Of a DNA stretch of 64,000 nt, positions 4,423 through 62,909 are shown in pieces (position 1 is the stretch's first letter; every line of letters starts with the position of its first letter). The translations under genes were made by a program, and so were the position numbers. The notes beneath the pieces are model-generated. The model saw only the letters and a list, made by a program, of their open reading frames with translations, was not told the origin of the DNA and ran no database searches. Source of the stretch: Hyphochytrium catenoides (Eukaryota; Protista; Hyphochytriomycota); the NCBI GenBank assembly GCA_900088475.1, contig FLMG01000350.1, positions 207,216 to 271,215 of the forward strand, given 5' to 3'.

Positions 4423-5196
4423 TCACCCCAGGCTGGCGGAAGCACCTTCCAGGCCCACCCTTCTATAAACTCGCACATAATCCAAAAGGAGTTCTTGAGG
4501 GAAAACAGTTTGTCCATCGGGAGGTGGGACTGGGTTTCCCCCGACAGCAAGGTTTACAATGATATGAAAGCGTTGATCGAACATCCAAGGACATGGTCCT
4601 GCCAAGCAAGGGCCCAGATCACCCGGTGTCTTTGTGGCATAATGGATCCCATCCACGTACCATTTTATGGCTCGCTCCTCCCATTCAATGGCAAAAGAAT
4701 GGAACTCATCTGCAAAGCTGCCCACGGGAAGGACAAATTCACCGCTCGACCACTTGTTATGCGGCCAAGGATCGCCGTAGTTGATAGCTCCCTTGACTAC
4801 CCGGCAGAAGTCATCCTGCCCCATCATTTCCATCACATCTATTTCCCCGCTGAGAGGCCAGCCACCGTAAACATTGTCTTCTGGCAGTAGCCAGAACGCT
4901 GGCCACATGCCTTTCCCTTGAACCAGCTTCGCGCGAAACTCGATCTTTCCATAGCAAAAGCTAAACTTTTTCGAGGTGTTAATTCGTGCGGACGTGTACT
5001 CCTTGCCCAGATACCATTCCCGGCGGGCCGTGATCACTAGATTACCGTCCTTCACTTTAACATTCTCCGGGTCGTCTCTGTAGTACTGGAGCTCGTTGTT
5101 TCCACAGCCATCGCCACGAACCTCGACATTCCAGTAGGCTCGATTCAGTGCGTCCCCATTGAAGTCATCTTCCCAGATGAGCTCGTACGTTGACAT
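4423..5196 (-). CDS. Glycoside hydrolase family 16 beta-1,3-glucanase (laminarinase-type)
   Basis: 257-aa uninterrupted ORF with LIWEDDF, GNNELQYY, YTSARINT, GMWPAFWLLP, the catalytic WPLSGEIDVMEMMG (EIDxxE), and FDQRFHIIVNLAVGG...DYVRVY. Confidence 0.95.
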   Translation of the reverse strand: MSTYELIWEDDFNGDALNRAYWNVEVRGDGCGNNELQYYRDDPENVKVKDGNLVITARREWYLGKEYTSARINTSKKFSFCYGKIEFRAKLVQGKGMWPAFWLLPEDNVYGGWPLSGEIDVMEMMGQDDFCRVVKGAINYGDPWPHNKWSSGEFVLPVGSFADEFHSFAIEWEERAIKWYVDGIHYATKTPGDLGPCLAGPCPWMFDQRFHIIVNLAVGGNPVPPPDGQTVFPQELLLDYVRVYRRVGLEGASASLG

Positions 5197-17479: not shown

Positions 17480-18606
17480 GTGCATGATGAATGGGCTGTC
17501 ATGGACGGGCTCAATCATGTAAGAATGACACTTCCTCACCTCCCGATTTTGTCCATCAATGACGCGGAAGACGTAACGCCTTCTGTCTGCGGCCGTCTCT
17601 GGACCTCCGGTGAGTAAACTGCCAATCTCAACACCAGATGCAACCTCTCCACCTTTCAGAGAGATAATTTTGCGCCGATCGTAGAGGGAGTCATCCTGCT
17701 CAGGAGCATTCTTGAGCAAGCGATCCATTTGGAGAGGAGTCTGACAGACGTACCTTATAGATTTGTAGTTCATGACTGTGAGGACGCAGGTAGACAAATT
17801 TTCGCTCCCAGTTCTTAGACTTTTCATCCTCTAGGAGGAGCCATCCGCTGAACTCCTCCATGGCTGAAACTTCTATAGACTATCACCATCGCCATTTCAG
17901 AGCTACTTGTACCACCATTTATCCCCGTTAGACAGCTGTCATAAAGTCGCTGTCCTTCCAGAACTTGGCTCCCACGCCAAGTGAGCTGCCAAGAACGTTG
18001 ACACCTGACAGCAGTTGACGGCACAGATGGCAAGCAGATGAGCTATCACCTGCAGCAAGGGAGTCTCAGTACTTCCTACGTCCTCGAGCCAGTACAAGTT
18101 CCCCCGCAGGACGGACGCTGTCCCCAGCTTTGCTATTTATTACCCGGTCTCTCGATCTCCAGCTATTCTGCTGCTGTCAAGTCGCTGTGTCTGCGGGAAT
18201 GTCATCAACAGATCAGAATCTCTCTGTCTTCTGCCCTGTTCCCCCTTTCAGATCTCTTCACCCTCAACATACATGTCTCCTGGAGGACGCCTGGGGCTGT
18301 AATGGATGATAAGAGTAGATGGAAGATCGTGAGGTTGGCTCTTCGCTCCTTGGCACACTCTATAGTTCTATGGAGTATTTGAAGTCGGATGCCACACTCA
18401 AACGACTTCCCCTGGCTGTCTACTACTGGTCGGCCTCTCTCCTTAGGGACTGCATAGCATTAAGTGGGTTATCAACGAGGCATCAGAGGCTGATCATGTG
18501 GCAACGCGGACCAGCTTAGGCCTCGGTCGGCTGTAAGGCATGCGCGACTTACGGAGGTGTGACTAGATGTGAGCTACTCTCGTGTGGTTACCAGAGCATA
18601 GCACAT

Positions 18607-19806
18607 ATGCGTCAAAGTGCTATCAACAAAATCCTCACTATCCGGATGCTATGGTCGCGCAGGCGCCTATTTCGATACTTTATCGTGGCGATAGGACTGC
18701 TATGTCTCTATTATGCCGTAGTCCTCGTCCTGACTCAAAGATGTGCTGTCACCCCCCTGCAGCGTCACCCTGTGGACTTTCAAGTTGATCTGCACCAACT
18801 TGAGAGTCTTTTGTCAGATACGCGCGAGGACAGGAAGAACGGTTACATAGTCAATGCTGCACAGGTTGCCATCATAGTACGGGTTAGCGGAAAGGATCTG
18901 CGAGGCAGCCAAGTACGGTCAATAGAGCTTAGCTGGGGTCGAGATGCAGTGGAGCTAGGATTGCCAGTGCTTTTTGTAAATGACCAGAGTTCAAGGTTGC
19001 TAGGAGTTTCTACGACCTCAGAACTCGCCAAAGATATCAGGGCCATTCCTTCCATCTGGCTGGCCTGGTCTAACGCACTGAGGAGGCTGCCCGAAGCAGA
19101 GTTTCTAGTGATGGTGAACGAAACGACTTACCTCCGACCGGACGTCCTCTTAGACTTCGTTAGGCGTGTACCCATCGGCACTAATTCCTCCTTCGGAAAC
19201 AAGATTTTTGGTTTCTTAGACGTGGGAGCAGGCCAGATTTTTACTTCCGCCTCTGTTAGGGCCATGCTGAGAAATCAGGAGCAGGGTCGCTGTTCGCAAA
19301 CGGTGTTAGATGATCTCACTGTCTCCCGCTGCGCGGAAGCTGCTGGCACCAAGCTGGTGTCTCACCCCATGATGCACCGATATCCGCCGCATGAGTTCTG
19401 GGGCTGTGCAGTACCCGCCGTTTTTCGGCTCTACCTTGGCACCAGATGGTATGAAGTTGCTGACCTTCAGGACATGTGGATGACCTTCAATTACATCGAG
19501 GGTGGCCATATGGTGCAAATCCACAACTTTTTGAGGAAGTACGGAAACAGAGGCTCTGACTGTCTGATTGGAGGCCTGTCTGCTCTGTCAATTTGCACCG
19601 TCTATGGCTATATTGAAGATGAGACCATCTTTATCAAATGGCTGGTTCTTCGGGCCGTCGCTATTCTCAGCATACTTCTTGGGGCCGTGCGACTTTGGAG
19701 GATGAGGACTTCAAAGTCCCGTGCAGTATCTTCAATCTCCTATAGCGCTATTGGCGCAGGTCTGAACGACGAAGAAGCCCCACTAGTGCCGTTGAAGGTT
19801 GAGTAA
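18607..19806 (+). CDS. GT31/Fringe-like (core-1 beta-1,3-galactosyltransferase fold) membrane protein with degenerate DxD; single exon
   Basis: N-terminal type II anchor (RRRLFRYFIVAIGLLCLYYAVVLVL). EFLVMVNETTYLRPDVLLDFV resembles WFxKxDDDTYV...L..FL, GAGQIFTSASVRAM resembles GAGYVLS, and DDLTVSRCAEAAG resembles EDV.lg.C...G. There is an extra C-terminal hydrophobic helix. Confidence 0.65.
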   Translation: MRQSAINKILTIRMLWSRRRLFRYFIVAIGLLCLYYAVVLVLTQRCAVTPLQRHPVDFQVDLHQLESLLSDTREDRKNGYIVNAAQVAIIVRVSGKDLRGSQVRSIELSWGRDAVELGLPVLFVNDQSSRLLGVSTTSELAKDIRAIPSIWLAWSNALRRLPEAEFLVMVNETTYLRPDVLLDFVRRVPIGTNSSFGNKIFGFLDVGAGQIFTSASVRAMLRNQEQGRCSQTVLDDLTVSRCAEAAGTKLVSHPMMHRYPPHEFWGCAVPAVFRLYLGTRWYEVADLQDMWMTFNYIEGGHMVQIHNFLRKYGNRGSDCLIGGLSALSICTVYGYIEDETIFIKWLVLRAVAILSILLGAVRLWRMRTSKSRAVSSISYSAIGAGLNDEEAPLVPLKVE

Positions 19807-27286: not shown

Positions 27287-29221
27287 ATGATTATCTTGGC
27301 CTCGGCGCTAGTCATCCTGTCATCAGAGAGCTTGCGCACGGCGATTGAGCTGCTCTTCGCAGAGCTATCGGCGATGCTAGCGGAGAACTTCACGGCGGTG
27401 CTGGGAGGAATTATCCTCTGCAGCACTCTGCTGGGAACAATCCAGGTTCTGCCGCGCCCTTATGCTATGCCTAAAAGCGCCTCTATGCTTGGGTTGGCGA
27501 GCTCTGCGGGTGAGCTTAACGATTTACAGCCACGAGGAAGAGACAAACCACTAAAGCGATATTGCAGTTTTGCTTGCTCCTACGGTCTTGGCATTTCAGG
27601 AGATTGATGTCAACATGCTTCCAAACCTTGGAACTTTCAAGCTGAATTTGCCAGAGCACGTTACGGAGTGGCTAGACAAGGTGGACCGGTCTACCTGGTT
27701 GCTGCCATACTGGAACCACATGCTGGTGAGGCGGAAGAACGTTTGCCAGTTTTTTTAACAGTACACTCGAACTTAGCGGTGACACTCTCCTATGGGTCTT
27801 TGTGCTTCGCGAACCTCTTCTAATATCTTGCGGAGGACTCACGGGCTTGTCTTTCTCTCTCAGGACAACTTCACTGATTTTCAGATTATGTCACTGGGAA
27901 CTTTCATACTCCATGAGCTCATCTACTTCAGCGCTTGGGTCCCCTACATCCTTATTGATCAAATTCCTGCCTTCAAGCGCTATAAAATTCAAGAGGTAGG
28001 CCTCTTCCCTACCAGCTATTCTCCCAATCCTTGAACAGCTCTACTACACAGGCCTTTCCTTGACCTCATTCTTCCCTTCGTCTCCTAGTCTTGACATTTG
28101 AAAGGTTCAACCTGGTTCTCTTGCCTTCTTTCTTCTCGCCTTCTCTGACCAGACTCATGTATGACCTTTCATAATCGCCCGGCAGAGGCGTCCCAATACT
28201 TGGAAGCAGACGTGGAAATGCCTCAAGCAGCTTGCCATCAGCCACACGCTCATTCAGTTCCCGATGATCCTTTTCACCAAGTGGGGTCTCCAACACCTCG
28301 GCTTTACTATGGATACCCCTTTGCCGCGCCTGTAAGGCAACACCACATGCTTGACATTAGGTCAAATCAGCGTCTGATCAAGTTGCCCTATTCTTTCGTG
28401 CTTGATCGCTCATCTTTAACTATACATGGTATCTCCTTTAGATCGGAGATCCTGCCTAAAGTGCTGGGCTGCTTCATCATCGAAGACTTTTACTTCTATT
28501 GGCTCCATCGCTTCCTGCACTGGAAGAAAATCTACAAGTACATCCACAAAGGTAACCCCTCTCTGCTTTACCCTTCTGGTATCTCTTCACCTAACTTGTC
28601 GCGCAATGGTTACGCTGTAATGCCATCCCTTGCCTTGCACAGTGCACCACGAGCATGCAGCTCCGTTTGGCATTGCTGCAGAATATGCTCACCCGGTAGA
28701 GACTATGCTATTGGGAGTTGGCACGATTCTCGGTCCGTTATTCTTCACGCGACACTTGTTAACCTTGTGGGTGTGGCTTGCGTGCCGTCTCCTGGAGACG
28801 GTCGAGGACCACTCCGGTTATGAGCTTCCGTGGAACCCTTCCAACTTTTTTCCGTTCTGGGGAGGTAAGAGGACTGCTCGTGCAGCTTGGCCTTTGATGC
28901 CTAGGGGACTATGGACATTGACATCGATGTTTCTATAGGCTCCGTCCACCACGACTTCCACCATAAGAACTTTGAAGGGAACTACGCTTCGGTCTTTACT
29001 ATCTGGGATCGTATCTTTGGCACCGACGTGGACTTCAGGGTGGACCAGGTACCGCATATAATCAGTCTTGCTCTATCGTGTCCATCGACATCACCGGTTA
29101 GTTGACTCGCGTTGTGATTGGACAGAGTGCCAAGAGGGCAGTGGGGAAGTCCATGTGGAAGGATGGGTTCGATAGGCTGAGCCTTGCCCCAGCTGTCGTT
29201 GTGTCAAAGAAGCAGCTATAG
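27287..29221 (+). CDS. ERG25: Sterol 4-alpha-methyl oxidase (fatty acid hydroxylase superfamily); multi-exon, start uncertain
   Basis: [27 protein letters not shown]; His boxes [42 protein letters not shown] and HHDFHH; C-terminal KKQL ER-retrieval signal. Confidence 0.92.
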
Positions 29222-29419
29222 CGCACAGAGTTCAAATTGTTCTTACTTACAAAGAGAAGTAAAGCGATCGCTATCTAGTGCACCAAGATAACGCTGGGGC
29301 CTCTCTCATTCTGACGGGAAGTGGTCGGCAAACACCATTAAGGGCAGGAGGAGGGATAGGTGACGTTAACAGAGCCGTGAGGAAGGATGGAGGAATGGTT
29401 CTAAGAAATAGCAGATCCC

Positions 29420-31705
29420 TTAGAGCTTGGAGTTGACGTTCATCCTCGCCTCGAAAGTCTCGATGCGCTCCCTCAAGCTCTCCGAATTGTCATCTCCCGA
29501 GCTCACAGAGTCACGTTCTAGCTCATTCGCTTCAGAGCAGTACAAGTCCAAAAGGAATGAGACCGCGGCGTCGCCCAACGCGAACGTTCTCGGTGATGGG
29601 ACGCAGGCAAAGACATGATGGGTCCCTACAGAACGTGTCGCCTTAGTTTCATGTGCAATGCCACTGCAATGTAAAAGCAACCAGGCATCTTCTCTGGCGC
29701 GATTGCAAGCCAAACCCACGATCTGGCTAGGTTTCGTCCCAAAAGCCAACCTTGAGTTGAAGCATTGTCCCTTTAAACACTCTCTGTGTATCTCTGAGCT
29801 TGCCCATTGCCATATCGGGTTATTTTCCACCTCTTGAGTCCTTATCCTTTGCCCGTGGTTGTTGGCTGCACGGTTACCTCTGCTGCTATCTACGCGGGAA
29901 TGCGCTTACCGGGTATCTCGATGTATACGTCCTTGACATGTATTTGTCCTGCCTCTTGCCGGGCTACCTTCAGTTGATAATGAAACTCTCGAGAATCCTC
30001 CACGGGGACCAATGTGTCAAGAGCGCCGTGAACTGTCATAATAGGAGGAATTTTCTTTCGCTTGACCTCGGAGATTAAGGCAATTGGAGAGGCTGCATCA
30101 AACTCTTCCTTAGCACTGGAGAGTCGTTGTTGGATCACAAAGCGCTGGATAAACCTGAATGACCGACAGGAGGTAACAGGATTAGCGAGTAGCGAAAAGC
30201 AGGCTTCGTACAGATAAACAAAAGGTAGCGCTTGTGTTGGAAGCCTCAAGGTTGTTATCTGCCTCTTACTTGACGAAACCGTCATTTAAACGCGAGGAAT
30301 GGAAGCCATTCCTGTCTGCTAGATCGTGGACTCCGAATAGATCAATGCAGCCCTTGATCGTGGTGTCCACGTCCTCAAAGCCAGGCTAGGCAGATAGGAG
30401 AGGCGGTTGATAGATTAGAACGTGAGGAAATGACACAAAGATGGCAGTGGCAGACTGAAAGGTCTCGGAAACGCTGCACTAAGTAGACGGCGCCCAACCT
30501 GATATATAGGGTTGTTAGCGCTGAAGGCCATCATGAGCGCCAAGTGGCCACCTGCTGACTCTCCTCCAGTCACGATAAAGTTAGGGTTCGCTGCAGATGA
30601 AGCAGGAGGGTCAGAATCATATTTGACACACTGAAGGGTCAGGAATGAAGGTATGCACTTTCATCTGAGGGAATTGGCTAGGCCATTACCTTGAAGCAGG
30701 GATTTGCCGTGTTGCCTAATGAAGGCGACAGCTCTCTTGCAATCAATCAACTGCGCGGGGTAACTAGAACGCGGTGCCAGACGATAGTCAATGGCGCACA
30801 CTACCCAGCCCGCCCTTGCCACTTCGTAGAGGAAAGGGATCATGGCAAAACTGCGAGTGCCCACGACCCATCCTCCTCCTATAAGTAATGGAGTAAGCAT
30901 CAGCTTCAATGTAGGCATAACTAGCATTATCCCTGACAGAAGCACTAGCAACGCCCGCTATGCGAGGGGATAGAGTAACCCGGAACAGACAGATGAAGTT
31001 GTCCTTCGAGGCTCAGAAGAGGTATTAGATGACAAGACACAAGGGATGTAGGTACCGAAGAAGAGAACGTATCCGCACCGTGAATATAGAGCAAGACTGG
31101 GGCGTTCCGAGGGCAGTGTTTGGATTTGTACACATCCATCTTCAGTTGCACCTTTCCTACTGTGGCAAAGACCACACCTCGTCTAACAGTAACATCCTTC
31201 GACATTAGAGGATATAGCGGAACGAGACAGAGGAAGAGGCGGTAAAGGGAGAGAGAGCCAAGGTTGGCCAATGGCTGGATTCCCGTCTGTGCCAGAGTGT
31301 CGCGGAAATACATCCTTGCTTGGAAGCTGTGGGTGAGGATATTCCAATATCTCGATGTAGATCTCACGGACAGCAAGAGCGCTAAGAGCCCAGGGATGCT
31401 GCCAATCGTGCTGGGATACTTTCGCAAGTAATGACCCAAAGCCAGTATATTGGCCAGGAGAAAGTAGTGGGACATCTCCGAGGGGATAAGCGATAACCAC
31501 ATGTCTACGAAGGTCTAAAAATAGGCAAGATAACGACGGTAGGGTGAGAATGGGCACAGGCGAGCGGGCATGGCCGGCACACCTGTTTATGGGGGAGCCT
31601 GTGGCGAGCCAGCCAAGAAAGCTTCGTCATGGCGATCGTAAGAGCCAGAAAAATCCATGCCGGAGCCTTCTGGCCTAGCCTTCGAGTTATCATTGTTACC
31701 GGCAT
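29420..31705 (-). CDS. Hormone-sensitive-lipase family alpha/beta-hydrolase esterase with N-terminal membrane segment and C-terminal PTS1 (SKL); multi-exon
   Basis: PVLLYIHG/GGW oxyanion motif, AIDYRLAP, GESAGGHLA nucleophile (30540-30570), HGALDTLVP, EIPG/THHVF; ends ...MNVNSKL*. Confidence 0.9.
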
Positions 31706-32014: not shown

Positions 32015-32075
32015 GCTCTCTCTCTCTCTCTCTCTCNNNNNNNNNNNNNNNNNNNNNNNNNNNNNNNNNNNNNNN
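32015..32075. repeat. (TC)n microsatellite running into an assembly gap (N 32037-32075)
   Basis: ctctctctctc tract directly followed by an n run. Confidence 0.9.
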
Positions 32076-33106
32076 CCTCACTCCCGCACCTTCAATCAGA
32101 GCAGAAGAGTGACCTCTGCAGCTCAGAAGGGACTAGACTCCGAAACGAGGTCCCTACCCTGAGGCCGCCCCCTTAGAATCCTAAAGCTACTCCATTTACC
32201 TACACTCATAACGGGGGTAGAGTCCCCCACCCAACCCACCTTCATAACCTGCGAACACGCCCAATTCTTCTTCAACTTGGGGTTGGAAGCACCAATATTA
32301 CGAATTAGCATGCGTTATGTGGCTTCTGTAAGGAATACGTTATGCTTGGCTGTCCTTATCCTTCATCTGAAGACTTTTGCTGTTGGGGCTACACCGTACC
32401 AGCGGCTCTGTCTGTGAAGAGCTTGTGTCCCTCTATGGTCCGTGATGTCCAAACACCCTTGCATTGACCCTCGAGAGAGGTTGGTGGGGACAGGTGCTGG
32501 TTCCGCAGTCCAATGGACATTGCAGATTGTTTCTACAACTGCAACTGAAGAGGTTTCAAGAGCTGACCTGGCTTCTGTTTGGTCGTTCTTCTGGCCGGGA
32601 TGGTGGTGCGGGTGAGTAGTTCTAGTAGTTCCAATGGCAAGCAGATCTCTTCTTCACTTGAAGATGGATGGAGTTGATCCCACTGCTGCTTTGGTGGTTG
32701 TTGGCTGGGATGCTGGATGTCCAGCAGAAATAGTCAAATAGTGCATGACATTCGTCCGTCCCTTAGATTAAGATGGTTAGCGAGGAATGGCTGGAACAGA
32801 TTGGCCTCAGGATCTTATTTGTGGCAAAATTAATGCTTTTACTACGTGTTGACTCACCTAGACCAAAGGAGTCGAATACTGCTGGAGCAGATAACTCTAA
32901 GTAACTCCACTTCACCTGTGTTCAACTATTTATCAGAGAGCTAAGGTAGGGGTCATGGAAGAGGGATGGGACAATGATTTGTTATAGTGTGGATTGCCCA
33001 CAGCTGGTATGTTACGAAAAATATGGATGAACTGAGCTAAGTTATGACTGAGAATGTGATGGTGGTTATCACAACCTAACAGCAGTGATGATGGCCACTT
33101 CAAAGT

Positions 33107-34312
33107 CTAAGAGTGCTTTGCCATATCCTCCTCATTGAGGGTCTTACGTAGCGACTCCACCTGAGCAACGTGCGCATCGACTAGGGGGTCCATAATTGCG
33201 AACCAGAGTGGAGGCACAAGCGCCAGAAGAGACATTCCTGCATAGCCAGTGGGAAGATTGGGAGACTCATCAAAAGACCGCAGAATTTGGTATCGCCGGT
33301 AAGGATACGCATGATGATCGGAGTGCCGCTGGAGTTTAAAGAGGAAGTAGTTCGTGATGCGCATATTGGCGTTCCAGGAATGGATGGGACGGACCCGCTC
33401 CCATTGTCCGTTGGCAAGCTTGATCCTCTCAAGCCCATAGTGCTCCACGTAGTTAATAACCTCTAGAAGTGAAAAGCCGATGAAGCTCTGGGCAAAGAAG
33501 AAGAGTCCAGCGGCTGGACCAAACGCTACGACGAGAGCAAGAGCAATGACAATAGGACCCACAGTGTACCCAATCATGGCATTATGATAGGGATGATAAG
33601 CAGACTTTCCGAGCTTCGCAAGACGCTTGAACTCGATGTTCCAGGCACTCATGTAGGAGCCAACCACCGATTGCTTCCAGAAGTTGTAGAAAGACTGGCC
33701 CTTTCGTGCAGTAGCTGGGTCATTGGGAGTCGCCACGTTCCAATGATGACCATGCACATGCTCAATTTGGAAGTGTGCGTATGAGGTGAACAGTAGCGTC
33801 AGCTTTGCTAAGAAAGGCTCCAAAGTGGTGCGCTTGTGCCCAAGTTCATGGGCGACATTGATGGCCAGACCAGAGCAGATCCCGACACCTAGAAAAAGCC
33901 CAATTACCTCGGAAATAGTCATGGGAACTGTAGCCGCGTAGTAGCATCCGCCAAGGACGCAGGTGATATATGCAAGGGGCCATAGGCACGTTGCCACCTG
34001 ATACCGCACCTGCTTCTCCAGCACCTTTGCCTGGTTGGGAGTCGGATTGAGCTCGAGGTGAGGGACGATAAAATCCAGGAGCGGAATGACCCCAAACGTC
34101 ACGACGAGGGTTGAATAGTGCCATACTCCGCCTTCTACCATGCCCAGTGCAACAAAGCACGGAATAGTGTACACAAGGAGATAGGGGAGAAGGCTGAAAT
34201 CATCCACACTTTTGGCATAGTTAGAGACAGTTGAAAACGGGGCCACGTAGGCTTTCTTCACAGCATCCTGCTGGGTCGTGGATGTTGCTATCGCCGTCGC
34301 CATCAGAACCAT
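33107..34312 (-). CDS. alkB: Alkane 1-monooxygenase (integral-membrane non-heme diiron AlkB); single uninterrupted ORF
   Basis: All four AlkB signature boxes are present: AHELGHK, EHVHGHH..VATP.DPATAR.G, NYVEHYGL (HYG motif) and LQRHSDHHA...YQ.LR...P.LP.GY. It also has FGVIPLLD in TM2, HSWN, and about six hydrophobic segments. Confidence 0.95.
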   Translation of the reverse strand: MVLMATAIATSTTQQDAVKKAYVAPFSTVSNYAKSVDDFSLLPYLLVYTIPCFVALGMVEGGVWHYSTLVVTFGVIPLLDFIVPHLELNPTPNQAKVLEKQVRYQVATCLWPLAYITCVLGGCYYAATVPMTISEVIGLFLGVGICSGLAINVAHELGHKRTTLEPFLAKLTLLFTSYAHFQIEHVHGHHWNVATPNDPATARKGQSFYNFWKQSVVGSYMSAWNIEFKRLAKLGKSAYHPYHNAMIGYTVGPIVIALALVVAFGPAAGLFFFAQSFIGFSLLEVINYVEHYGLERIKLANGQWERVRPIHSWNANMRITNYFLFKLQRHSDHHAYPYRRYQILRSFDESPNLPTGYAGMSLLALVPPLWFAIMDPLVDAHVAQVESLRKTLNEEDMAKHS

Positions 34313-35682
34313 ACGCTCACCAGGCTTCAGGGCCTGTGGATGGATGTCTTATCGTGAGCGTGGTAAGTCTCGTTCTGCGGGGAAAGCGTAGTTGTAGCAA
34401 CACCCTTAGGAGCTGTCAAATTGCCGTGCGGCATAGTAGAACTTTGGGGTGATTTTCCATGCTAACGAACCTCTTCCCAGCCTCTGTTTCTCACTCTCTT
34501 CTCTGTCTCCTTCTTCTACTCTCGAGCGTGAACTTGGCACTGGTAGTGCCGCCTCATCAGTAGAAAGAATAACAACTCCTCTTTGTATCTACTCCTTTGT
34601 TACGAGGACCTGCTGGGGCGGACCTCGACTTTTTCTCTCAATGCGCAGAATCCCCTTACCATGGACTCTCCCTTGCAATGTTAGCGCTTCAGATAAAGAG
34701 ACGGACCAAGTAGAACATCCTTCCTGACATCACCAATCCGCGACTCTCAAACAGGCAAGTAGTCCCCCATCGCGATGGGCTACATGCTCTAGAACTCTCG
34801 ATGGCTAAAGTCTTACGACCACTGTCGCAATACGGCCAAGAGAATACCTTGTCATGGGCCAAACAAGCCATGTTATTTGGGATGCATTGGGCAGGGATAG
34901 AGTCCTGTAGTCAATAATAAAAAGATCCTTCTTATCTTTCTAGAAATAAGGTCTCTGGCCTGTGATTGGCTGGTGAGGGCAAGTTGCCTGTGACTAGTGT
35001 CAAGCTTGCCGCTTCCTGATTGGCCAAAGGACAAACAACAAATAATACGCCGAGACGAGCGCCGCTAAACTATCTACTGTGCAGTTCAGAGGGCACAGTA
35101 ATAACACAACCTGTGACTGCCAGTGCTCCACAACCTCCTAGTGGTTCTCCCAATCACTAAGCTTGCCTATAGCCTTGCCTATAGTCGCAGCTTCATCATG
35201 ATGATCCGCTGCGGGCCATTGAGAGTTGAACAACCGCTCAAAGAGCTCCAGGTGGCGCAATCGACTCTGTCTTCCCCTTTCTTCTCCTCCTACTTGTAAG
35301 TAGAAGTTCCTCTCTCACGAATACCGGCCTGGAACGTTAAACCAGCAGCCTACTTGCCCACCTTCATCTAGCCTTTGTAGTTCTAGCACATGACCAAAAT
35401 CGGATGGCATAAAGTCTGATGTCGATCGAACAAAACTTTCATGTTCCAAGAAGCACACTGCTGAAACTCAGCGATGTCAGAGGTGCTTTCAGGTTCCATA
35501 ATCTGAAACAAATTGCCCTGCGGTCCGCGCATTCAACCATGGGTCTAGTAAAGATCATGCCCAAGCTCGACGGGCAGTAGAGCTCCCCACAAGTGTAACA
35601 AAGCAAGACCTTTACACTGATTCATTGATTCATTGAAGAGACAGTCACCGTTCACACGTATCAGTCTTAGACTAGAAAAATG

Positions 35683-37758
35683 CTAGTTTTGCCAGTTTAG
35701 GCTTCGCTCAACAGCGTCGTTCCATCTTTGATAGAGATGATCTCTTTCGGTAGAACTCATGAGTGGCTTGAATTCTCTGTCCTTTCTCCAGTTTTCCCGG
35801 AGCTGTACTCCATCTTTCCAGAAACCTACAGCCAGACCCGCTGCGTAGGCTGCTCCGAGCGCTGTAGTCTCCGCCACTTTCGGTCTGACGACGTTGACTC
35901 CAAGAATGTCCGCCTGAAATTGCATACACAAGGAGTTCGCTGTCATGCCACCGTCTACTTTCAGTGTGGTAAGTGCGACACCACTGTCTTCCTTCATCGC
36001 GTCTACTACCTCCCTCGCCTGATAGCACACAGCTTCAAGAGCTGCTCGACAAATATGGTTCTTGTTGGTGTAGGCTGTCATCCCCACTAAGCATCCACGA
36101 GCATCCTGGCGCCAACGAGGAGCGAAGAGCCCAGCGAATGCGGGCACAAAGTACACTCCCCCATTATCTTTCACCGTCCTAGCAAACGCTTCCACCTGCG
36201 CGGCATTTGAGATGAGACCGAGGTTGTCGCGGAGCCACTGAATGAGAGAACCCGCCACAGCAATTGAGCCTTCAAGTGCGTATACACAAGGCAGATTTCC
36301 AATCTTGTACCCCACTATAGAGAAAAACAAGCCAAAGCAGTCATTTGTTAGGAGGTGAGGACTTAGCATGGCTGTCAAGCCAACAGGATTAATTTGTCAC
36401 TCACCGGTGGTCAAGAGCCCATGCTTGCTGGGGACTATCGATGTCCCTGTGTTCAATATAAAGAAGCATCCAGTCCCGTAAGTATTCTTTCCCTCACCAG
36501 GAGTTAGGCACGTCTGCCCAAATAATGCCGCTTGCTGGTCACCAAGTATGCCAGAGATCTTGACCCCCAGCAGCCCAGAGTCTGGGCTGCCAAGGCCATA
36601 GATCTCGGATGAAGACAGAATCTTTGGTAGCATTTGTCGTGGGACCTTAAAGTTCTCCAGAAGCTCCGTGCACCAATCTAGAGTCTTCAAGTCCATTAAT
36701 AAGGTACGGGAAGCGTTAGAGACATCTGTGGCATGGACACCGCCGTTTGGCCCGCCGGTGAGGTTCCATAAGAGCCACGAGTCGATTGTCCCAAAAAGGG
36801 CATGACCAGCCTCAGCAAGCTCCCGCAAGCCTTCAACGTTCTCCAGCAGCCATTTTAGCTTAAGTCCAGAGAAATAGACCGAAAGTGGCAAGCCAGTGAC
36901 TGCATAAATATCGCGTTGAGTCAGACAACTGCTCTACATATGGGCTGACGAGAACAACCAAGAAGCTAACTTACTTGACCGGAATCTGCCAGCATCGTTA
37001 CCAGGAAAGTGTGGACCCTCCCCCTCGCAGAACCTCTTGACGAGATCAGATGTACGGGTATCATGCCACACAATGGCATTGTGAAGCGGCTGGCCGGTAC
37101 GCTTATCCCAGACGACGGTTGTTTCTCTCTGATTGGTGATCCCACAAGCGGCCAGTCTATTGATAAAGGCAGCGAGGAAAGTATATTATGTCATGGACAC
37201 GAGTTGGCAACGCCTAGCGCAGCCAGCTAGAACCTACCTATCGGCTGAAATGCCTATGTGAGCCAGCGCCTCCACGATACAGGTTCTGGTATTGGCAAGG
37301 ATCTCAAGGGGATCATGCTCACACCAGCCTGCCTGAGGGTAGATCTGGCCATGCTCCAACTGATGAGAGGAGCAGATCTCGCCTGCGTGATTGAAGACAA
37401 TGAACCTTGTACTTGTGGTGCCTTGGTCTATAGCTCCCACATAGAATTGATCGTGCGCTTCAGTAGAAACCTTGCCGTTTTCTGTGGAATGCCTCGGTGC
37501 CGTCGTTTGAAGGATAAAGTCGGTCATGATGTTCCGTTTCCCAGAGAAAACTTGATATTGAAGTCGCGAGACTGGAGCACTATTGCGCAAAGAGCCTGTC
37601 TTTGATGAGAGTTTTCTTTCGCAGGCCCCGGGGAGTTTAGAACTGAGATGTATCCTCCTCTGTGGCAACGCGCCAACAACAGCCACTCGCTGAAATCTTA
37701 TTGTGGCTCCACTATTGACTGTCCTGCTACAAGTCCAAGTCCGAACAAGGTAATGCAT
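35683..37758 (-). CDS. glpK: Glycerol kinase; 4 exons; second in-frame ATG at 37527
   Basis: [109 protein letters not shown]. Confidence 0.97.
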
Positions 37759-40045
37759 CAGCTAAGGCCGAAGACTCCTAATAATGCCGTTATGGGCTAA
37801 TGGTAAGGTGGTTGACAACTAACCTGTCCGCATATGAATAGCACTTCAAACACAGTCAGCGATTGCCTTCAGACACAGGCTAACGATCATCCAACTTCCC
37901 TCCTCCTTGTCATCAGAATCTCTCTGTCATCCACGCAGTCTTCATCCCTGCTGCTGTTGGTATTTGCCGATGAAGATGGCGGAGTTGAAGCTTGGGATCT
38001 TCTACAGACAAGTCAACGCTTCAAGCTTTCCCCGCTCGTACACGTACAACGTTCAGGGGCTTGGCTGCGATAGTGAGTGTGGTACCGATGTGTGTTTGTT
38101 CAGAGCTGGCTTAACCGCCGCTAATTTATTCATCAAACACAGTATGATGGGCTTATGAAGTGGTGCGTTAGCAGACAAGACAGTTCGTGAGCGTACGGTC
38201 ACTCTGGACGCAGATTAGGCAATAGCCGGTAACGGTTATATATGGGCAATTCCCAGTCCTAGTGGTTCTGGCTGTACGCCGTGTACTGGGAGTTCCTGAT
38301 AGGGAGACAATCATCTCGTCCAAAAGCAGGCAAAAGACTGACAAACGCTTGTCAACAGAAGAGGCAAGCCTTTCCACATTCTTCTACTCCTAGGGGCCTT
38401 GTTATCGTACTGCTCATGGACGGGAAAGTAGTAGTAAAAACGTGTGAGTCCTTCGTACCTTTCCTAAGGCTTGTACAGTACTCGGAGCTGTGTATAATAA
38501 TCTCATGCCCAAAATACTCAACACCATCGAGCAGCGTCTAATCCTTGACCAAATCTACCTCGAGTTCTTGGAGGAGAAAGGACCACCCACCTCTTCTCTC
38601 CAGCAACAATGAAGTGGACGTGTACACTGAGAGATAGCAGCACTGGCATAGGAGCATTTGACCTCCTCCCGAACTGCTGCTGTCTCCCAGCGAGGAAGCA
38701 CAGCACTTGTATGTCCTGTTGTTCTTCCCAAACCCTCCTCCTTCTCTTTCCATTCCTGGCCCAATACGTACAGGTAGAAGACAGGGTCATCTCAGGGTTG
38801 TGGTGGGCAAAACAAAGCCCATGGTCTCATCAAGACTTCTGCTTCTGAAAGAGGGGGAGCTGCCTGGTTGGTGGGAGGAGAAATAACGGCCAAAGATCAT
38901 CCCCTTCTTCCTTCTCCTGTCTCGTTCTTTGCTTCTTACGAGTACCAAAGAATCTCATCACCACCAGCACCCCATCTCCGTCCGTTACTTGTACAGCCAT
39001 CATCAGCCCTTCCCCTGTACTGTAGACTTCCTAGCGTGCTGGGTACCCTTGCTGTGTACGAGTAGCTATAATAGCACAGGAAGTCTTCTTCCTTCGTTGT
39101 CACCAGTCTCACAATCATCGATGCTGGTTCCTTTCCTGTCTCTTCCACTGTGGGTTTAGTGATTTCCAACATCGTAACGCGTGCGCACGTCAGCCCCCCT
39201 TAGCAGCACAGAAATGAGAAGGTACCATTGTAGCATCATGTCGCTAGCCGCTCGACAGCGGCAGTGCGAGTCTTGCTGCTTGCAGTCTATCTCTCGGGTG
39301 GCAAGAGACAGAAGAACCAAAGTGATAGGCAGAAAGCCACCAGCATGGTCAGCGGTTACTTGTTTTACCTCGTCTTACGTTCATAGGAGCATTTCTAGAC
39401 ATCAATGCGCAACCGTTCACCGGCTTCCACTCAGCGAGGCATCCACTCGGCGAACAAATTACTGCCAGATTATTTCCCTTGAGTCTCTTCATCTGACTGA
39501 GCAAGAGGTGCAAGAGTAAGGAGCAGGGAGACAAGGACGACTGAAGTCGAGGACGAGAATCTAGCCATCATCTTCTGTGGGCCTACCCAATGGCACAAGA
39601 GACCAACAGGCTCACTCTTATAAAGGTTACGTGCTGAACAGACTTATAAAAAGTTGTGGCCAAACGCTACGTGGTGGCTGCACAATGATAGGAGATCTGC
39701 AGGACCGCGCCGGGGCCGCCCCTTGTAGATGTAGCTTGGTGGCGGGAACTATTCAGAAGGCTGGGAAGATCCTAATGATTGGAGTTATTCTCAGCGCTAG
39801 CATTGCATCAGTCATCTACGGAGTATGTCATCTGGAGCTCTCTCTCACATATTATACCTTCAGAGATTTGACCAAAGGATGTCAATCCCTTTCAGCTATC
39901 ATTCAAGCTTCCAACCTCGATGCGTTTCTTTGTTTTACAAATACTCTTTCTTATCCAATACACCTTTCTTATATCTGATGTTCCACATCCTTCGTTATGG
40001 GTTTACTACTCTGGTCCTACGACTTCGTCACTCCTGTCCCTCAGT

Positions 40046-61765: not shown

Positions 61766-62909
61766 ATGGAGCTACTGACTGCGATCAGCGCGACGGTTGT
61801 CGTACTCTCCATTCCTGTCCTATGCGCCTTGCTTATTGTCCCGTTATTTGTGCTAGAGATTCTTCAGTGGAGGATTTTTGCATCTTCTCCCAAGAACAAG
61901 GCAATCTTCATTACCGGCTGTGACACTGGATTCGGAAGGCTCCTTGCTGAGCGACTCTATCACAAAGGTGCCAAGGTCTATGCCGCATGCCTCACACCTA
62001 CTGGCTGTCAGACTCTAGAGAAGCTTTGCCCAGATAAAAGCAGAATGAGAACGGTGCAACTCGATATCACCGACCAAAAGAGCGTGGATAACGCCAGGGA
62101 CTTTATGTTCAAGGAGCTTGAAAATGACGAAAATGGTCTATGGGGCCTTGTAAACAACGCTGGTATCGCACGAGGCTTCTTCGTGGAGTTTACGCCGATT
62201 GAGAACTTTCAGCAAGTGATGGATGTAAACTTTATTGGGCAAGTCCGAATAACCAAGGCACTGCTACCCCTTATCCGGAGGAGTAAGAAAGGAGGTAGAA
62301 TCATCAACATTGCAAGCGTCGCCGGTAGGATGGCAGCTCCTGGTATGAGTGCCTATGCGGCTTCAAAATTTGCCATGGAAGCATGGTCGGACTCCCTGCG
62401 GCGTGAAGTGATGCCATTAGGTGAGCCACCAGGGGCCTTCCATAGGGAAGCGATCATGGTTCTAATAATCAAACGCTTTGATCCAGGCATCAAGGTGTGC
62501 ATCTTTGAGCCGTGGTTCTGCGCGACCGAGATTGTGAAGAGCCCGGAGCTCAACATCATTCCGTTCTTCCAGCAGGCCCCTGCCGAGATTCAGTACGTAG
62601 AAGTGTACTAGTGCTCGTCTCTACTTATTCCTGATCTCATAGTATGAAAATATCTGTAGGCAAGCGTATGGCGGTGAAGCGTGGGCGGAAAAGGCTGTTA
62701 AGGCCACAGCTCTTCTTCCCAAGTTTACGGAGAGTCCAAACGGTGTTGTTAACGGCATCAGCGCGGCGCTGTTTTCTCCGTGGCCGCGCGTCCGGTATTC
62801 CTGCACCTACTTCGGAGAACTCTTCGCTATTCCTATGTCCTGGTTCTCAGGCGAATTGCAGGACCTGCCATATTTTTTTGGTCGCTTCTTAGCACCATCA
62901 CCTAAGTGA
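61766..62909 (+). CDS. Short-chain dehydrogenase/reductase, SDR9C (17-beta-HSD6/retinol dehydrogenase-like), with N-terminal membrane anchor; 3 exons
   Basis: IFITGCDTGFG, LWGLVNNAG, GRIINIAS, YAASK. Spliced C-terminus QAYGGEAWAEK...PWPRVRY...APSPK*. Confidence 0.93.

What the first reader, a model, noticed from the sequence alone, without database searches (positions are those of the whole stretch)
33107..34312. Intact, intron-free bacterial-type alkane monooxygenase AlkB in an intron-rich eukaryote
Seen: a 401-aa ORF with all AlkB His boxes and no introns, while its neighbours carry several introns each. No rubredoxin domain is fused or adjacent. Known: AlkB is mainly a bacterial alkane-activation enzyme that needs rubredoxin/reductase, whereas alkane-using yeasts use CYP52. 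Aligning TM2 VVTFGVIPLLD to P. putida GPo1 LVWYGALPLLD puts Thr at the W55 chain-length gate, and a small residue there goes with long-chain substrates. Inference: a horizontally acquired hydrocarbon or long-chain lipid hydroxylase that uses a host electron donor (cytochrome b5 or a rubredoxin encoded elsewhere).
Basis: partly seen in the sequence, partly recalled or inferred. Interest (0 to 1): 0.8.

Follow-up and report, generated by a model that had tools for sequence, protein, structure and literature searches.

The report
Eukaryote-clade AlkB alkane hydroxylase gene
This is an intact gene for the membrane enzyme AlkB, which bacteria use to start burning alkanes, sitting in a protist's nuclear genome; it is not a fresh bacterial import but one member of a little-noticed AlkB branch shared by many unrelated single-celled eukaryotes.

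Summary
Positions 33107-34312 (-) are an uninterrupted 401-codon ORF encoding a complete AlkB-type alkane 1-monooxygenase. It matches PDB 8F6T at E=1e-88, keeps all nine iron-binding histidines, and gives an AF2 model with pLDDT 93.5 and TM 0.82 to 8F6T. Thr72 sits at the GPo1 W55 gate position.

The gene is on eukaryotic DNA. A glycerol kinase gene with three GT-AG introns lies 1,370 bp away with no gap between them. Read depth is flat across both genes in three DNA runs, and composition matches host exons. No rubredoxin or cytochrome b5 motif occurs in the window.

The nearest relatives are eukaryotic: Dermamoeba at 52%, then Corallochytrium and diplonemids. In ML trees, 16 labelled protist AlkBs from at least five supergroups fall in one clan (75/93). 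Capsaspora's copy is already annotated as "alkane-1 monooxygenase". The window's subclade is supported at 96/89* and shares an N-terminal extension and a GHHW motif that is absent from all 66 non-eukaryotic rows. No protein exceeds 52% identity in an exhaustive search, and an AU test rejects placing it with its best bacterial hit (p=0.005).

Bacterial ancestry of the whole clade remains plausible. The substrate and the electron donor are untested. The scan noted this same stretch once more in an overlapping window, not on other DNA.

The parts
33107..34312 (-). Complete intron-free AlkB (alkane 1-monooxygenase family) coding sequence, 401 aa plus stop
   Evidence: ORF. PDB AlkB 8F6T 1.4e-88 and 8SBB 4.2e-78. 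AF2 pLDDT 93.5 with TM 0.82 and rmsd 1.5 A to 8F6T.
34178..34312 (-). N-terminal extension (residues 1-45) absent from most bacterial AlkBs. It carries the motif PF-S..S....DDFS.LPY shared with Dermamoeba and Corallochytrium.
   Evidence: Alignment A1. Eukaryotic hits cover 93-97% of the query against 84-87% for bacterial hits. Residues 31-40 are modelled at pLDDT ~96 and residues 1-21 are disordered.
34097..34099 (-). Codon of Thr72, the chain-length gate position (GPo1 W55 = FtAlkB W62 = FtAlkBG I54)
   Evidence: Residue-by-residue alignments. Position equivalences come from PMC10110569 and PMC10113152.
33836..33850 (-). His box 1, HELGH (H155, H159)
   Evidence: Invariant in A1 and A3.
33740..33763 (-). 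His box 2, EHVHGHH (H185, H189, H190), followed by W191, a marker of the window's subclade
   Evidence: Invariant histidines. W191 occurs in 7 of 7 subclade members and in none of the other 84 rows.
33434..33454 (-). NYVEHYG motif (H291 ligand, and E290 = FtAlkB E281). L283 just upstream equals FtAlkB L274.
   Evidence: Invariant columns L283, E284, N287, Y288, E290, H291, Y292. Residue roles come from PMC10110569.
33311..33334 (-). LQRHSDHH, His box 3 (H330, H333, H334), with the L324xxL327 substrate-positioning motif adjoining
   Evidence: Invariant L324, L327, R329, H330, D332, H333, H334. The LxxL-HxxHH link is described in PMC10110569.
35683..37527 (-). Neighbouring host gene: glycerol kinase (FGGY_N plus FGGY_C), 4 exons, 532 aa, introns at 37157-37237, 36900-36974 and 36315-36404 (all GT-AG). 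It is 1,370 bp upstream of alkB on the same strand, with no assembly gap between.
   Evidence: Pfam on the exons, sequence, and spliced CDS of 1,599 nt with a single terminal stop.
32037..32075 (.). Assembly gap (N run), 1,031 bp beyond the alkB stop codon. It separates alkB from the esterase-like gene on the left.

Best explanation
The ORF is a functional-looking nuclear gene for an AlkB-family integral-membrane diiron hydroxylase. It belongs to a eukaryote-specific AlkB clade found in many heterotrophic protists. That clade probably descends from one or a few old acquisitions from bacteria, and it has since diversified into subclades by duplication, loss or eukaryote-to-eukaryote spread. The gene has stayed intron-free while its base composition became host-like.

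Inferred mechanism, by homology with FtAlkB and GPo1 AlkB: six transmembrane helices form a hydrophobic tunnel. Nine histidines hold two irons on the cytosolic face. After two one-electron reductions, O2 is activated and the terminal methyl of a long alkyl chain is hydroxylated. The small gate residue Thr72 suggests a chain of roughly C12 or longer.

The electron donor is unknown. The basic patch that docks rubredoxin in FtAlkBG is weakened in the eukaryotic clade, so a different partner is a reasonable guess but not shown. Cytochrome b5 with its reductase is typical for eukaryotic membrane diiron enzymes, and a ferredoxin is another candidate.

Shown here: family membership, intactness, residence in a eukaryotic genome, and eukaryotic nearest relatives. 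Inferred: substrate, chain length, donor, and the age and number of transfers.
For: Identity and intactness. All nine His ligands, E290, L283 and L324xxL327 are conserved.

Eukaryotic residence:
- Glycerol kinase with three GT-AG introns lies 1,370 bp away without a gap.
- Depth is flat over alkB and glycerol kinase in three DNA runs from two samples, about 25, 300 and 4-5.
- alkB has GC 0.519 and GC3 0.590, against host exons at 0.50-0.52 and 0.53-0.57. RSCU correlation of alkB to host exons is 0.36, against 0.30 between host exons.
- No flanking repeats.
- The 8 alkB variants tabulated (omits 63 across the stretch) are 3 synonymous and 5 amino-acid changes, no stops.

Eukaryotic clade:
- The top hits are Dermamoeba, two Corallochytrium copies, Pigoraptor and diplonemids.
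- A profile search adds Capsaspora (XP_004365667.1, named alkane-1 monooxygenase), Chromosphaera, Phalansterium, Colponema, Clydonella and a second Rhodelphis copy.
- In the IQ-TREE C20 tree of 94 rows, 10 eukaryotes plus 3 unlabelled rows form one clade at 95/89*.
- In the 91-row tree, 16 eukaryotes, the window and 9 unlabelled short-contig rows form one clan at 75/93, and the window subclade is at 96/89*.
- The unlabelled subclade member P0003/P0121 sits next to a TFIIA gene, so it is eukaryotic.
- Capsaspora alkB lies on a 3.8-Mb scaffold among PRP18, WAPL and RPL44 genes and is also intron-free.
- The AU test rejects window plus best bacterial clade (delta lnL 61.6, p=0.005).
- The exhaustive search finds nothing above 52% identity.

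Donor hint: basic residues at the six FtAlkG-docking positions average 2.24 in the eukaryotic clade against 3.61 in the other rows. The Arg169-equivalent position is never basic in 25 eukaryotic rows but is basic in 28 of 66 others.
Against: The all-eukaryote clan is only moderately supported (75/93), and eight of its nine unlabelled members are not proven eukaryotic. Many labelled members come from transcriptomes that could carry prey or contaminant sequences. Genomic proof exists only for the window, Capsaspora and L086; Corallochytrium and Chromosphaera are genome gene models whose loci were not checked. The tree is unrooted. The host lineage was not identified, so vertical descent and eukaryote-to-eukaryote transfer cannot be told apart. 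No RNA run was listed, so expression is unshown. No biochemical data exist for any eukaryotic AlkB that I could find. The docking-patch difference is modest, those positions also vary among bacteria, and only 26 of 80 bacterial loci have a rubredoxin motif nearby.
Confidence: 0.8

Rival explanations
1. Recent, lineage-specific horizontal transfer of a bacterial alkB into this organism.
For: The gene is intron-free in an intron-rich neighbourhood. The family is overwhelmingly bacterial, with thousands of bacterial homologues.
Against: The nearest relatives are eukaryotes, and the window subclade at 96/89* is entirely eukaryotic. The best identity to any bacterial protein is about 52%. The AU test rejects grouping with the best bacterial clade. 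GC, GC3 and codon usage are host-like. The N-terminal extension and GHHW motif are shared with other eukaryotes. Capsaspora and L086 copies are intron-free too, so lacking introns is a trait of the clade and not a sign of recency.
Confidence: 0.05
2. Bacterial contamination or a chimeric scaffold: the alkB stretch does not belong to the eukaryote.
For: An N gap lies 1 kb from the gene. Logan unitigs are short, and none spans alkB and glycerol kinase in one piece.
Against: There is no gap on the glycerol kinase side. Unitigs tile the interval with small breaks, for example X3 covers 34209-35608 and then 35647-36677. Depth equals that of glycerol kinase in three runs from two samples. Composition is host-like. 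The protein's relatives are eukaryotic.
Confidence: 0.02
3. Several independent bacteria-to-eukaryote transfers from related, poorly sampled donors produced the eukaryotic subclades, rather than one old acquisition. The window's subclade then spread among eukaryotes.
For: Support for the all-eukaryote clan is only 75/93. Four distinct, well-supported eukaryotic subclades exist, and Holozoa and Amoebozoa each appear in more than one. Rows of unshown origin (P0087/P0088, P0059) and a bacterial one (L051, Oligoflexus) branch nearby without resolution.
Against: In the best tree all eukaryotes are one clan. In the smaller data set the clan is starred at 95/89*. No row shown to be bacterial lies inside any eukaryotic subclade, although the database holds 5.8 billion proteins.
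Confidence: 0.3
4. The enzyme keeps the AlkB chemistry but its natural substrate is not a free alkane. It could be a fatty alcohol, fatty acid, ether lipid, wax or isoprenoid tail of the cell's own or its prey's lipids.
For: No eukaryotic AlkB has been assayed in any paper I could find. Engineered and natural AlkBs hydroxylate aliphatic esters (abstract of 10.1101/2025.08.27.672531). The clade has its own sequence markers near the diiron site, W191 and no Arg at position 187. The neighbours are lipid-related: glycerol kinase, an alpha/beta-hydrolase and an FA_hydroxylase exon.
Against: The residues that position the alkane terminus in FtAlkB (L274, L315xxL318, E281) are invariant here. The neighbourhood is not conserved in Capsaspora.
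Confidence: 0.35

Closest known systems
Fontimonas thermophila AlkB (PDB 8SBB) and the AlkB-AlkG fusion FtAlkBG (PDB 8F6T)
   Same: 45% and 41% identity over about 350 residues. Same fold (TM 0.82 and 0.80). Nine His ligands, the E281-equivalent Glu, and the L274 and LxxL substrate-positioning residues are kept.
   Different: No fused rubredoxin. There is an extra ~40-residue N-terminal extension and a longer C-terminal helix. Thr replaces Trp62 or Ile54 at the gate. Only 3 of 6 basic AlkG-docking residues are kept as R or K. It is encoded in a eukaryotic nucleus.
Pseudomonas putida GPo1 AlkB (AlkBGT system)
   Same: Same family and histidine motifs.
   Different: GPo1 has W55 and prefers C5-C12, whereas this protein has Thr. 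The small residues tested at this position (A, V, L, I) go with longer alkanes; Thr itself has not been tested (PMC10110569). GPo1 sits in an operon with rubredoxin and its reductase, and here neither is in the window. I had no tool-supplied GPo1 sequence, so the comparison goes through 8SBB.
Eukaryotic AlkB homologues: Capsaspora owczarzaki XP_004365667.1 ('alkane-1 monooxygenase'), Corallochytrium limacisporum (2 copies), Dermamoeba algensis, Pigoraptor, Chromosphaera, diplonemids, and others
   Same: Same clan in ML trees. Intron-free where genomic DNA is available. Dermamoeba is the sister at 52% identity. The N-terminal extension is shared with Dermamoeba and Corallochytrium, and the GHHW motif with the whole subclade.
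   Different: Capsaspora, Pigoraptor and Chromosphaera lie in a different subclade (GHHK, with a C-terminal G-I/V-N/D-P-F motif). The genomic neighbours are not shared with Capsaspora. None has been studied experimentally as far as I could find.
Eukaryotic alkane oxidation by CYP52 P450s in yeasts, and eukaryotic FADS-like diiron enzymes (SCD1, Scs7p) fed by cytochrome b5
   Same: Same overall task (terminal hydroxylation of alkyl chains), or the same type of His-rich diiron centre in an ER membrane protein (PMC10110569).
   Different: CYP52 enzymes are haem proteins unrelated in sequence. SCD1 and Scs7p share only the His motifs and not the AlkB fold. Foldseek finds no such match above noise.

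Membership tests
AlkB integral-membrane alkane 1-monooxygenase family | Significant full-length sequence similarity to experimentally characterised AlkB | tested here: met
   phmmer gives 1.4e-88 (8F6T) and 4.2e-78 (8SBB), covering residues 59-382.
AlkB integral-membrane alkane 1-monooxygenase family | Four histidine-rich motifs supplying nine iron ligands (HELxH, EHxxGHH, NYxEHYG, LQRHSDHH) | tested here: met
   H155, H159, H185, H189, H190, H291, H330, H333 and H334 are all present and invariant in 72 sequences. The nine-His coordination is described in PMC10110569.
AlkB integral-membrane alkane 1-monooxygenase family | AlkB fold (six TM helices plus a cytosolic diiron cap), distinct from SCD1 and Scs7p | tested here: met
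   The AF2 model has pLDDT 93.5 and pTM 0.90. Foldseek gives TM 0.82 and rmsd 1.5 A to 8F6T, and 0.80 to 8SBB. The next hits are at or below TM 0.45.
AlkB integral-membrane alkane 1-monooxygenase family | Substrate-terminus positioning residues (FtAlkB L274, L315xxL318, E281) | tested here: met
   L283, L324xxL327 and E290 are invariant.
AlkB integral-membrane alkane 1-monooxygenase family | Terminal hydroxylation of n-alkanes | not testable with these tools
AlkBGT three-component system (AlkB plus rubredoxin AlkG plus rubredoxin reductase AlkT) | Rubredoxin fused to or encoded near alkB | tested here: not met
   There is no rubredoxin domain in the protein and no CxxCG...CPxCG motif in six frames of the 64 kb window. 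The rest of the genome could not be searched. Only 26 of 80 bacterial alkB loci show such a motif within 3 kb, so absence nearby is weak evidence.
AlkBGT three-component system (AlkB plus rubredoxin AlkG plus rubredoxin reductase AlkT) | Basic docking patch for rubredoxin (FtAlkB R143, R148, R169, R215, R284, R287) | tested here: inconclusive
   The window has R161, P166, H187, K233, Q303 and R306, so 3 of 6 are basic. The eukaryotic clade averages 2.24 against 3.61 in the other rows. These positions also vary in bacteria.
Long-chain class of AlkB (small residue at GPo1 W55) | Non-bulky residue at the gate position | tested here: met
   Thr72 aligns to W62 of 8SBB and to I54 of 8F6T. The published rule names A, V, L and I. 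Thr itself is uncharacterised but also occurs in 7 of 66 non-eukaryotic relatives.
Eukaryotic AlkB clade (defined here) | Branches with eukaryotic AlkBs to the exclusion of bacterial ones | tested here: met
   Window with Dermamoeba at 95/89* and 94/89. Subclade at 97/88* and 96/89*. All-eukaryote clan at 95/89* (94 rows) and 75/93 (91 rows). AU rejection of the bacterial placement at p=0.005.
Recent bacterial HGT | A close bacterial donor relative, foreign composition, or patchy presence limited to one lineage | tested here: not met
   No bacterial hit exceeds 52% identity. Composition is host-like. Homologues occur in at least five eukaryotic supergroups.

The most novel reading that the evidence does not exclude
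AlkB is not an essentially bacterial enzyme. An old, eukaryote-wide AlkB lineage persists in many heterotrophic protists, including amoebae, unicellular relatives of animals, diplonemids, malawimonads, colponemids and Rhodelphis. It has swapped rubredoxin for a eukaryotic electron donor. These grazers and osmotrophs would use it to oxidise long-chain alkanes from prey, cyanobacteria or oil, which would be an unrecognised eukaryotic arm of the environmental hydrocarbon cycle.
Probability: 0.3. Interest if true: 0.75.

Novelty: new member of a known kind. Interest (0 to 1): 0.5.

Why it matters
AlkB is the standard marker gene for aerobic alkane degradation and is routinely read as bacterial. 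This window gives clean genomic proof that an intact AlkB sits in a protist nucleus, linked to an intron-bearing host gene at equal read depth. The comparison shows it is one of a coherent set of eukaryotic AlkBs that has apparently not been discussed in the literature I could search, although single entries are annotated, such as the Capsaspora protein.

Three practical consequences follow. First, alkB reads in metagenomes and metatranscriptomes may be partly eukaryotic. Second, the eukaryotic enzymes pose a clear and testable question about which redox partner feeds an AlkB where no rubredoxin system is evident. Third, the finding should not be counted as a recent HGT event for this genome.

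Tried and rejected
- RNA evidence: no RNA run was listed for the gene, so expression is unaddressed.
- Exact-protein look-up of the window AlkB in public assemblies found nothing on record, so the organism could not be named that way. Run and organism names are coded.
- Host lineage through the intron-free SDR at 61766-62611: the best named hits are animal SDR9C, RDH and BDH1 proteins at only 40-50%, which is too distant to place the host. Unverified first-stage notes speak of flagella and mitochondrial FtsZ. I left the lineage open.
- NCBIfam gave no hit at E<0.01, probably because of the filters or the divergence of this clade. Pfam and PDB are unambiguous.
- A conserved lipid or alkane gene cluster, as suggested by other first-stage notes, was tested only on the Capsaspora locus, which shares no neighbours. 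No other eukaryotic genomic locus of useful length was available.
- Search for a fused redox domain in the long eukaryotic homologues (Clydonella at 645 aa, P0139 at 639 aa, Capsaspora at 455 aa): Pfam sees only FA_desaturase.
- Flanking repeats, tRNA genes and Rfam families around the gene as transfer scars: none.
- Literature searches for eukaryotic or protist AlkB returned nothing specific. The only mention is a KEGG-level note of an expressed alkane 1-monooxygenase in Willaertia magna (PMC7285305; other searches).
- Donor lineage: the rows nearest the eukaryotic clan (L051 from Oligoflexus, plus P0087/P0088 and P0059 of unshown origin) are unresolved with support under 80, and an Asgard MAG copy (L007) sits inside a bacterial group, not next to eukaryotes.
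Full report
OBSERVATION

The ORF is real. The ORF listing gives ATG-to-stop at 33107-34312 on the minus strand, 401 aa. In a window where only five ORFs reach 230 aa, it stands out as an uninterrupted gene. Pfam assigns FA_desaturase at 4e-32. phmmer against all PDB chains returns only AlkB: 8F6T at 1.4e-88 and 8SBB at 4.2e-78, aligned over residues ~59-382.

All nine iron-ligand histidines described for FtAlkB (PMC10110569) are present and invariant in my 16- and 72-sequence alignments. They are H155, H159, H185, H189, H190, H291, H330, H333 and H334. The Glu next to Fe1 (E290) and the residues that position the alkane terminus (L283, L324xxL327) are also conserved. An AlphaFold2 model built on 72 homologues has mean pLDDT 93.5 and pTM 0.90. 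It superposes on 8F6T with TM 0.82 and rmsd 1.5 A, and on 8SBB with TM 0.80. The next PDB hit drops to TM 0.45.

Thr72 aligns with W62 of 8SBB and with the Ile called Ile54 in the FtAlkBG paper. Both papers equate that position with W55 of GPo1 AlkB.

IS IT REALLY IN A EUKARYOTE?

Yes, as far as the data go.

- The next gene upstream on the same strand is glycerol kinase (FGGY_N and FGGY_C).
- From the sequence I derived four exons and three introns of 81, 75 and 90 nt, all GT...AG. The spliced CDS is 1,599 nt and reads through to a single terminal stop, giving 532 aa.
- There is no N between this gene and alkB; the intergenic distance is 1,370 bp. The only nearby gap (32037-32075) is on the other side.
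- In three DNA runs from two samples, the assembler depth is flat over alkB and glycerol kinase: about 25, 300 and 4-5. Unitigs tile the interval, but no single piece spans both genes.
- alkB has GC 0.519 and GC3 0.590. Host exons have GC 0.50-0.52 and GC3 0.53-0.57. Its RSCU correlates with host exons (0.36) as well as host exons correlate with each other (0.30).
- The runs show allelic differences inside alkB. Three are synonymous and five are amino-acid changes, four of them in poorly conserved parts (the fifth, P266S, not assessed). No stops are among those listed.
- No repeats, tRNAs or Rfam elements flank the gene.

WHAT ARE ITS RELATIVES?

In a search of 5.8 billion proteins, the best hits are eukaryotic:

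- Dermamoeba algensis, 52% identity over 94% of the query
- Corallochytrium limacisporum, two paralogues
- Pigoraptor chileana
- the diplonemids Namystynia and Artemidia

Bacterial hits reach similar percent identity only over 84-87% of the length. A profile of the eukaryotic set adds more members:

- Capsaspora owczarzaki (XP_004365667.1, already named "alkane-1 monooxygenase" at NCBI)
- Chromosphaera perkinsii
- Phalansterium solitarium
- Colponema vietnamica
- Clydonella sp.
- a second Rhodelphis copy

An exhaustive HMMER pass over 1.84 billion cluster representatives finds 3,916 family members and nothing above 52% identity.

ML trees used IQ-TREE with LG+C20+F+G4 PMSF.

- With 94 rows, including named bacteria from 23 GTDB genomes, all ten labelled eukaryotes plus three unlabelled rows form one clade at 95/89*. 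The window pairs with Dermamoeba at 95/89*.
- With 91 rows and 16 labelled eukaryotes, the window's subclade has 96/89*. It contains the window, Dermamoeba, Corallochytrium x2, diplonemids x2 and P0003.
- In that tree all eukaryotes plus nine unlabelled short-contig rows are one side of a branch at 75/93.
- The one unlabelled member of the window's subclade lies 150 bp from a TFIIA alpha/beta gene on its contig, so it is eukaryotic too.
- Other unlabelled members sit on single-gene contigs with short flanks, as transcripts would.
- Forcing the window protein together with the bacterial clade that holds its most identical bacterial hit costs 61.6 lnL units and is rejected by the AU test (p=0.005). 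The caveat is that this group was chosen after the tree was seen.

The subclade also has sequence markers. One is an N-terminal extension with the motif PF-S..S....DDFS.LPY, shared with Dermamoeba and Corallochytrium. The other is Trp191 right after His box 2 (GHHW), present in 7 of 7 members and in none of the other 84 rows.

Capsaspora's copy is on a 3.8-Mb scaffold among PRP18, WAPL and RPL44 genes. It is intron-free, with a gene span of 1,368 nt for 455 codons plus stop. The L086 copy is intron-free as well. Lack of introns is therefore a property of the clade, not a sign that this copy arrived recently.

INTERPRETATION

The gene is a resident member of a eukaryotic AlkB clade. Because the family is overwhelmingly bacterial and the eukaryotic clan nests among bacterial sequences, a bacterial origin of the clan is the natural inference. 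It is old enough that members are only 40-52% identical and compositionally at home.

Holozoa and Amoebozoa each occur in more than one subclade. This points to old duplications with loss, to transfers between eukaryotes, or to a few separate acquisitions from related donors. I cannot separate these, partly because I could not identify the host. The SDR at 61766-62611 finds only distant relatives, namely animal SDR9C-type enzymes at 40-50%. The exact-protein look-up failed, and run labels are coded.

An Asgard MAG copy (L007) sits within a bacterial group, not beside the eukaryotes. That gives no support for archaeal vertical descent.

MECHANISM

By homology the protein should be a six-TM diiron terminal hydroxylase. 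Thr72 at the gate fits the class with small residues that accepts alkanes longer than about C12. Thr itself is not among the residues tested, and it is not special to eukaryotes: the eukaryotic clan shows V8, T6 and A4, and the 66 non-eukaryotic rows show V35, A13 and T7.

The donor is open. There is no rubredoxin domain, and no rubredoxin or cytochrome b5 signature anywhere in the window. Nearby rubredoxin is also missing from 54 of 80 bacterial loci.

FtAlkBG docks rubredoxin on six arginines (PMC10113152). The window keeps three as R or K (R161, K233, R306), has His at one (H187), and has lost two (P166, Q303). Across the trees, the eukaryotic clan averages 2.24 basic residues at these sites against 3.61 in the other rows. 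The Arg169-equivalent site is never basic in eukaryotes. This hints at a changed partner but does not show one. The AlkB family is known to accept other partners, since ferredoxin and ferredoxin-reductase fusions are described.

NOVELTY

AlkB is a known kind, and eukaryotic homologues are already in public annotation (Capsaspora, and a KEGG-level mention in Willaertia magna, PMC7285305). This gene is therefore a new member of a known kind. What seems undescribed in the searchable literature is the coherent, multi-supergroup eukaryotic clade and its possible donor switch. I score interest at 0.5. The headline claim of recent HGT is not supported, but the broader pattern is worth a specialist's look and is directly testable.

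Noticed in passing
P0146 (Clydonella sp., 645 aa) and P0139 (Logan contig L085, 639 aa): These two eukaryote-clan AlkBs carry a conserved C-terminal extension of about 250 residues after the AlkB domain. It has a predicted hydrophobic segment and no Pfam match, so it could be an unknown partner or anchoring domain.
   Followed up: partly
P0124 (Capsaspora), P0008 (Pigoraptor), P0125 (Chromosphaera), P0006: The holozoan subclade shares a C-terminal motif G-(I/V)-(N/D)-P-F-(V/A/K)-(D/E)(-P). Capsaspora and Pigoraptor also share a Pro/Lys-rich insertion after HYGL-x-R. Neither feature is present in the window protein.
   Followed up: no
L007 (MAG: Promethearchaeota archaeon RBin_111): An Asgard archaeal MAG contig of 173 kb encodes an AlkB 46% identical to the window protein. 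In the tree it falls inside a bacterial group, not next to eukaryotes.
   Followed up: partly
window 61766-62611 (+): An intron-free 281-aa short-chain dehydrogenase with an N-terminal hydrophobic segment. Its best named relatives are animal retinol dehydrogenase, 17-beta-HSD6 and BDH1 (SDR9C-type) proteins at 40-50% identity.
   Followed up: partly
window 4423-5196 (-): A 257-aa ORF with GH16 and SKN1/KRE6 beta-glucan-synthesis domains.
   Followed up: no
window 18559-19806 (+): The longest ORF in the window (415 aa, GTG start) has no Pfam match. GC3 is 0.548, like host exons.
   Followed up: no
window 27287-31502: Left of the gap are exon-like pieces of an FA_hydroxylase-type gene (28161-28823, +) and an alpha/beta-hydrolase (BD-FAE/Peptidase_S9 hits, 29890-31502, -). 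Together with glycerol kinase they prompted cluster ideas in other notes. The Capsaspora alkB locus shares none of these neighbours.
   Followed up: partly
window 32100-37800: DNA runs show many single-base and small indel differences from the window, and unitigs break often. This is consistent with two haplotypes or strain differences in the sequenced material.
   Followed up: partly
AF2 model m8eb254635a77 against PDB: Foldseek gives weak matches (E 1e-4, TM 0.42-0.45) to chain M or K of the Chlamydomonas Ycf2/Orf2971-FtsHi chloroplast import motor complexes (8XQW, 8XKS).
   Followed up: no
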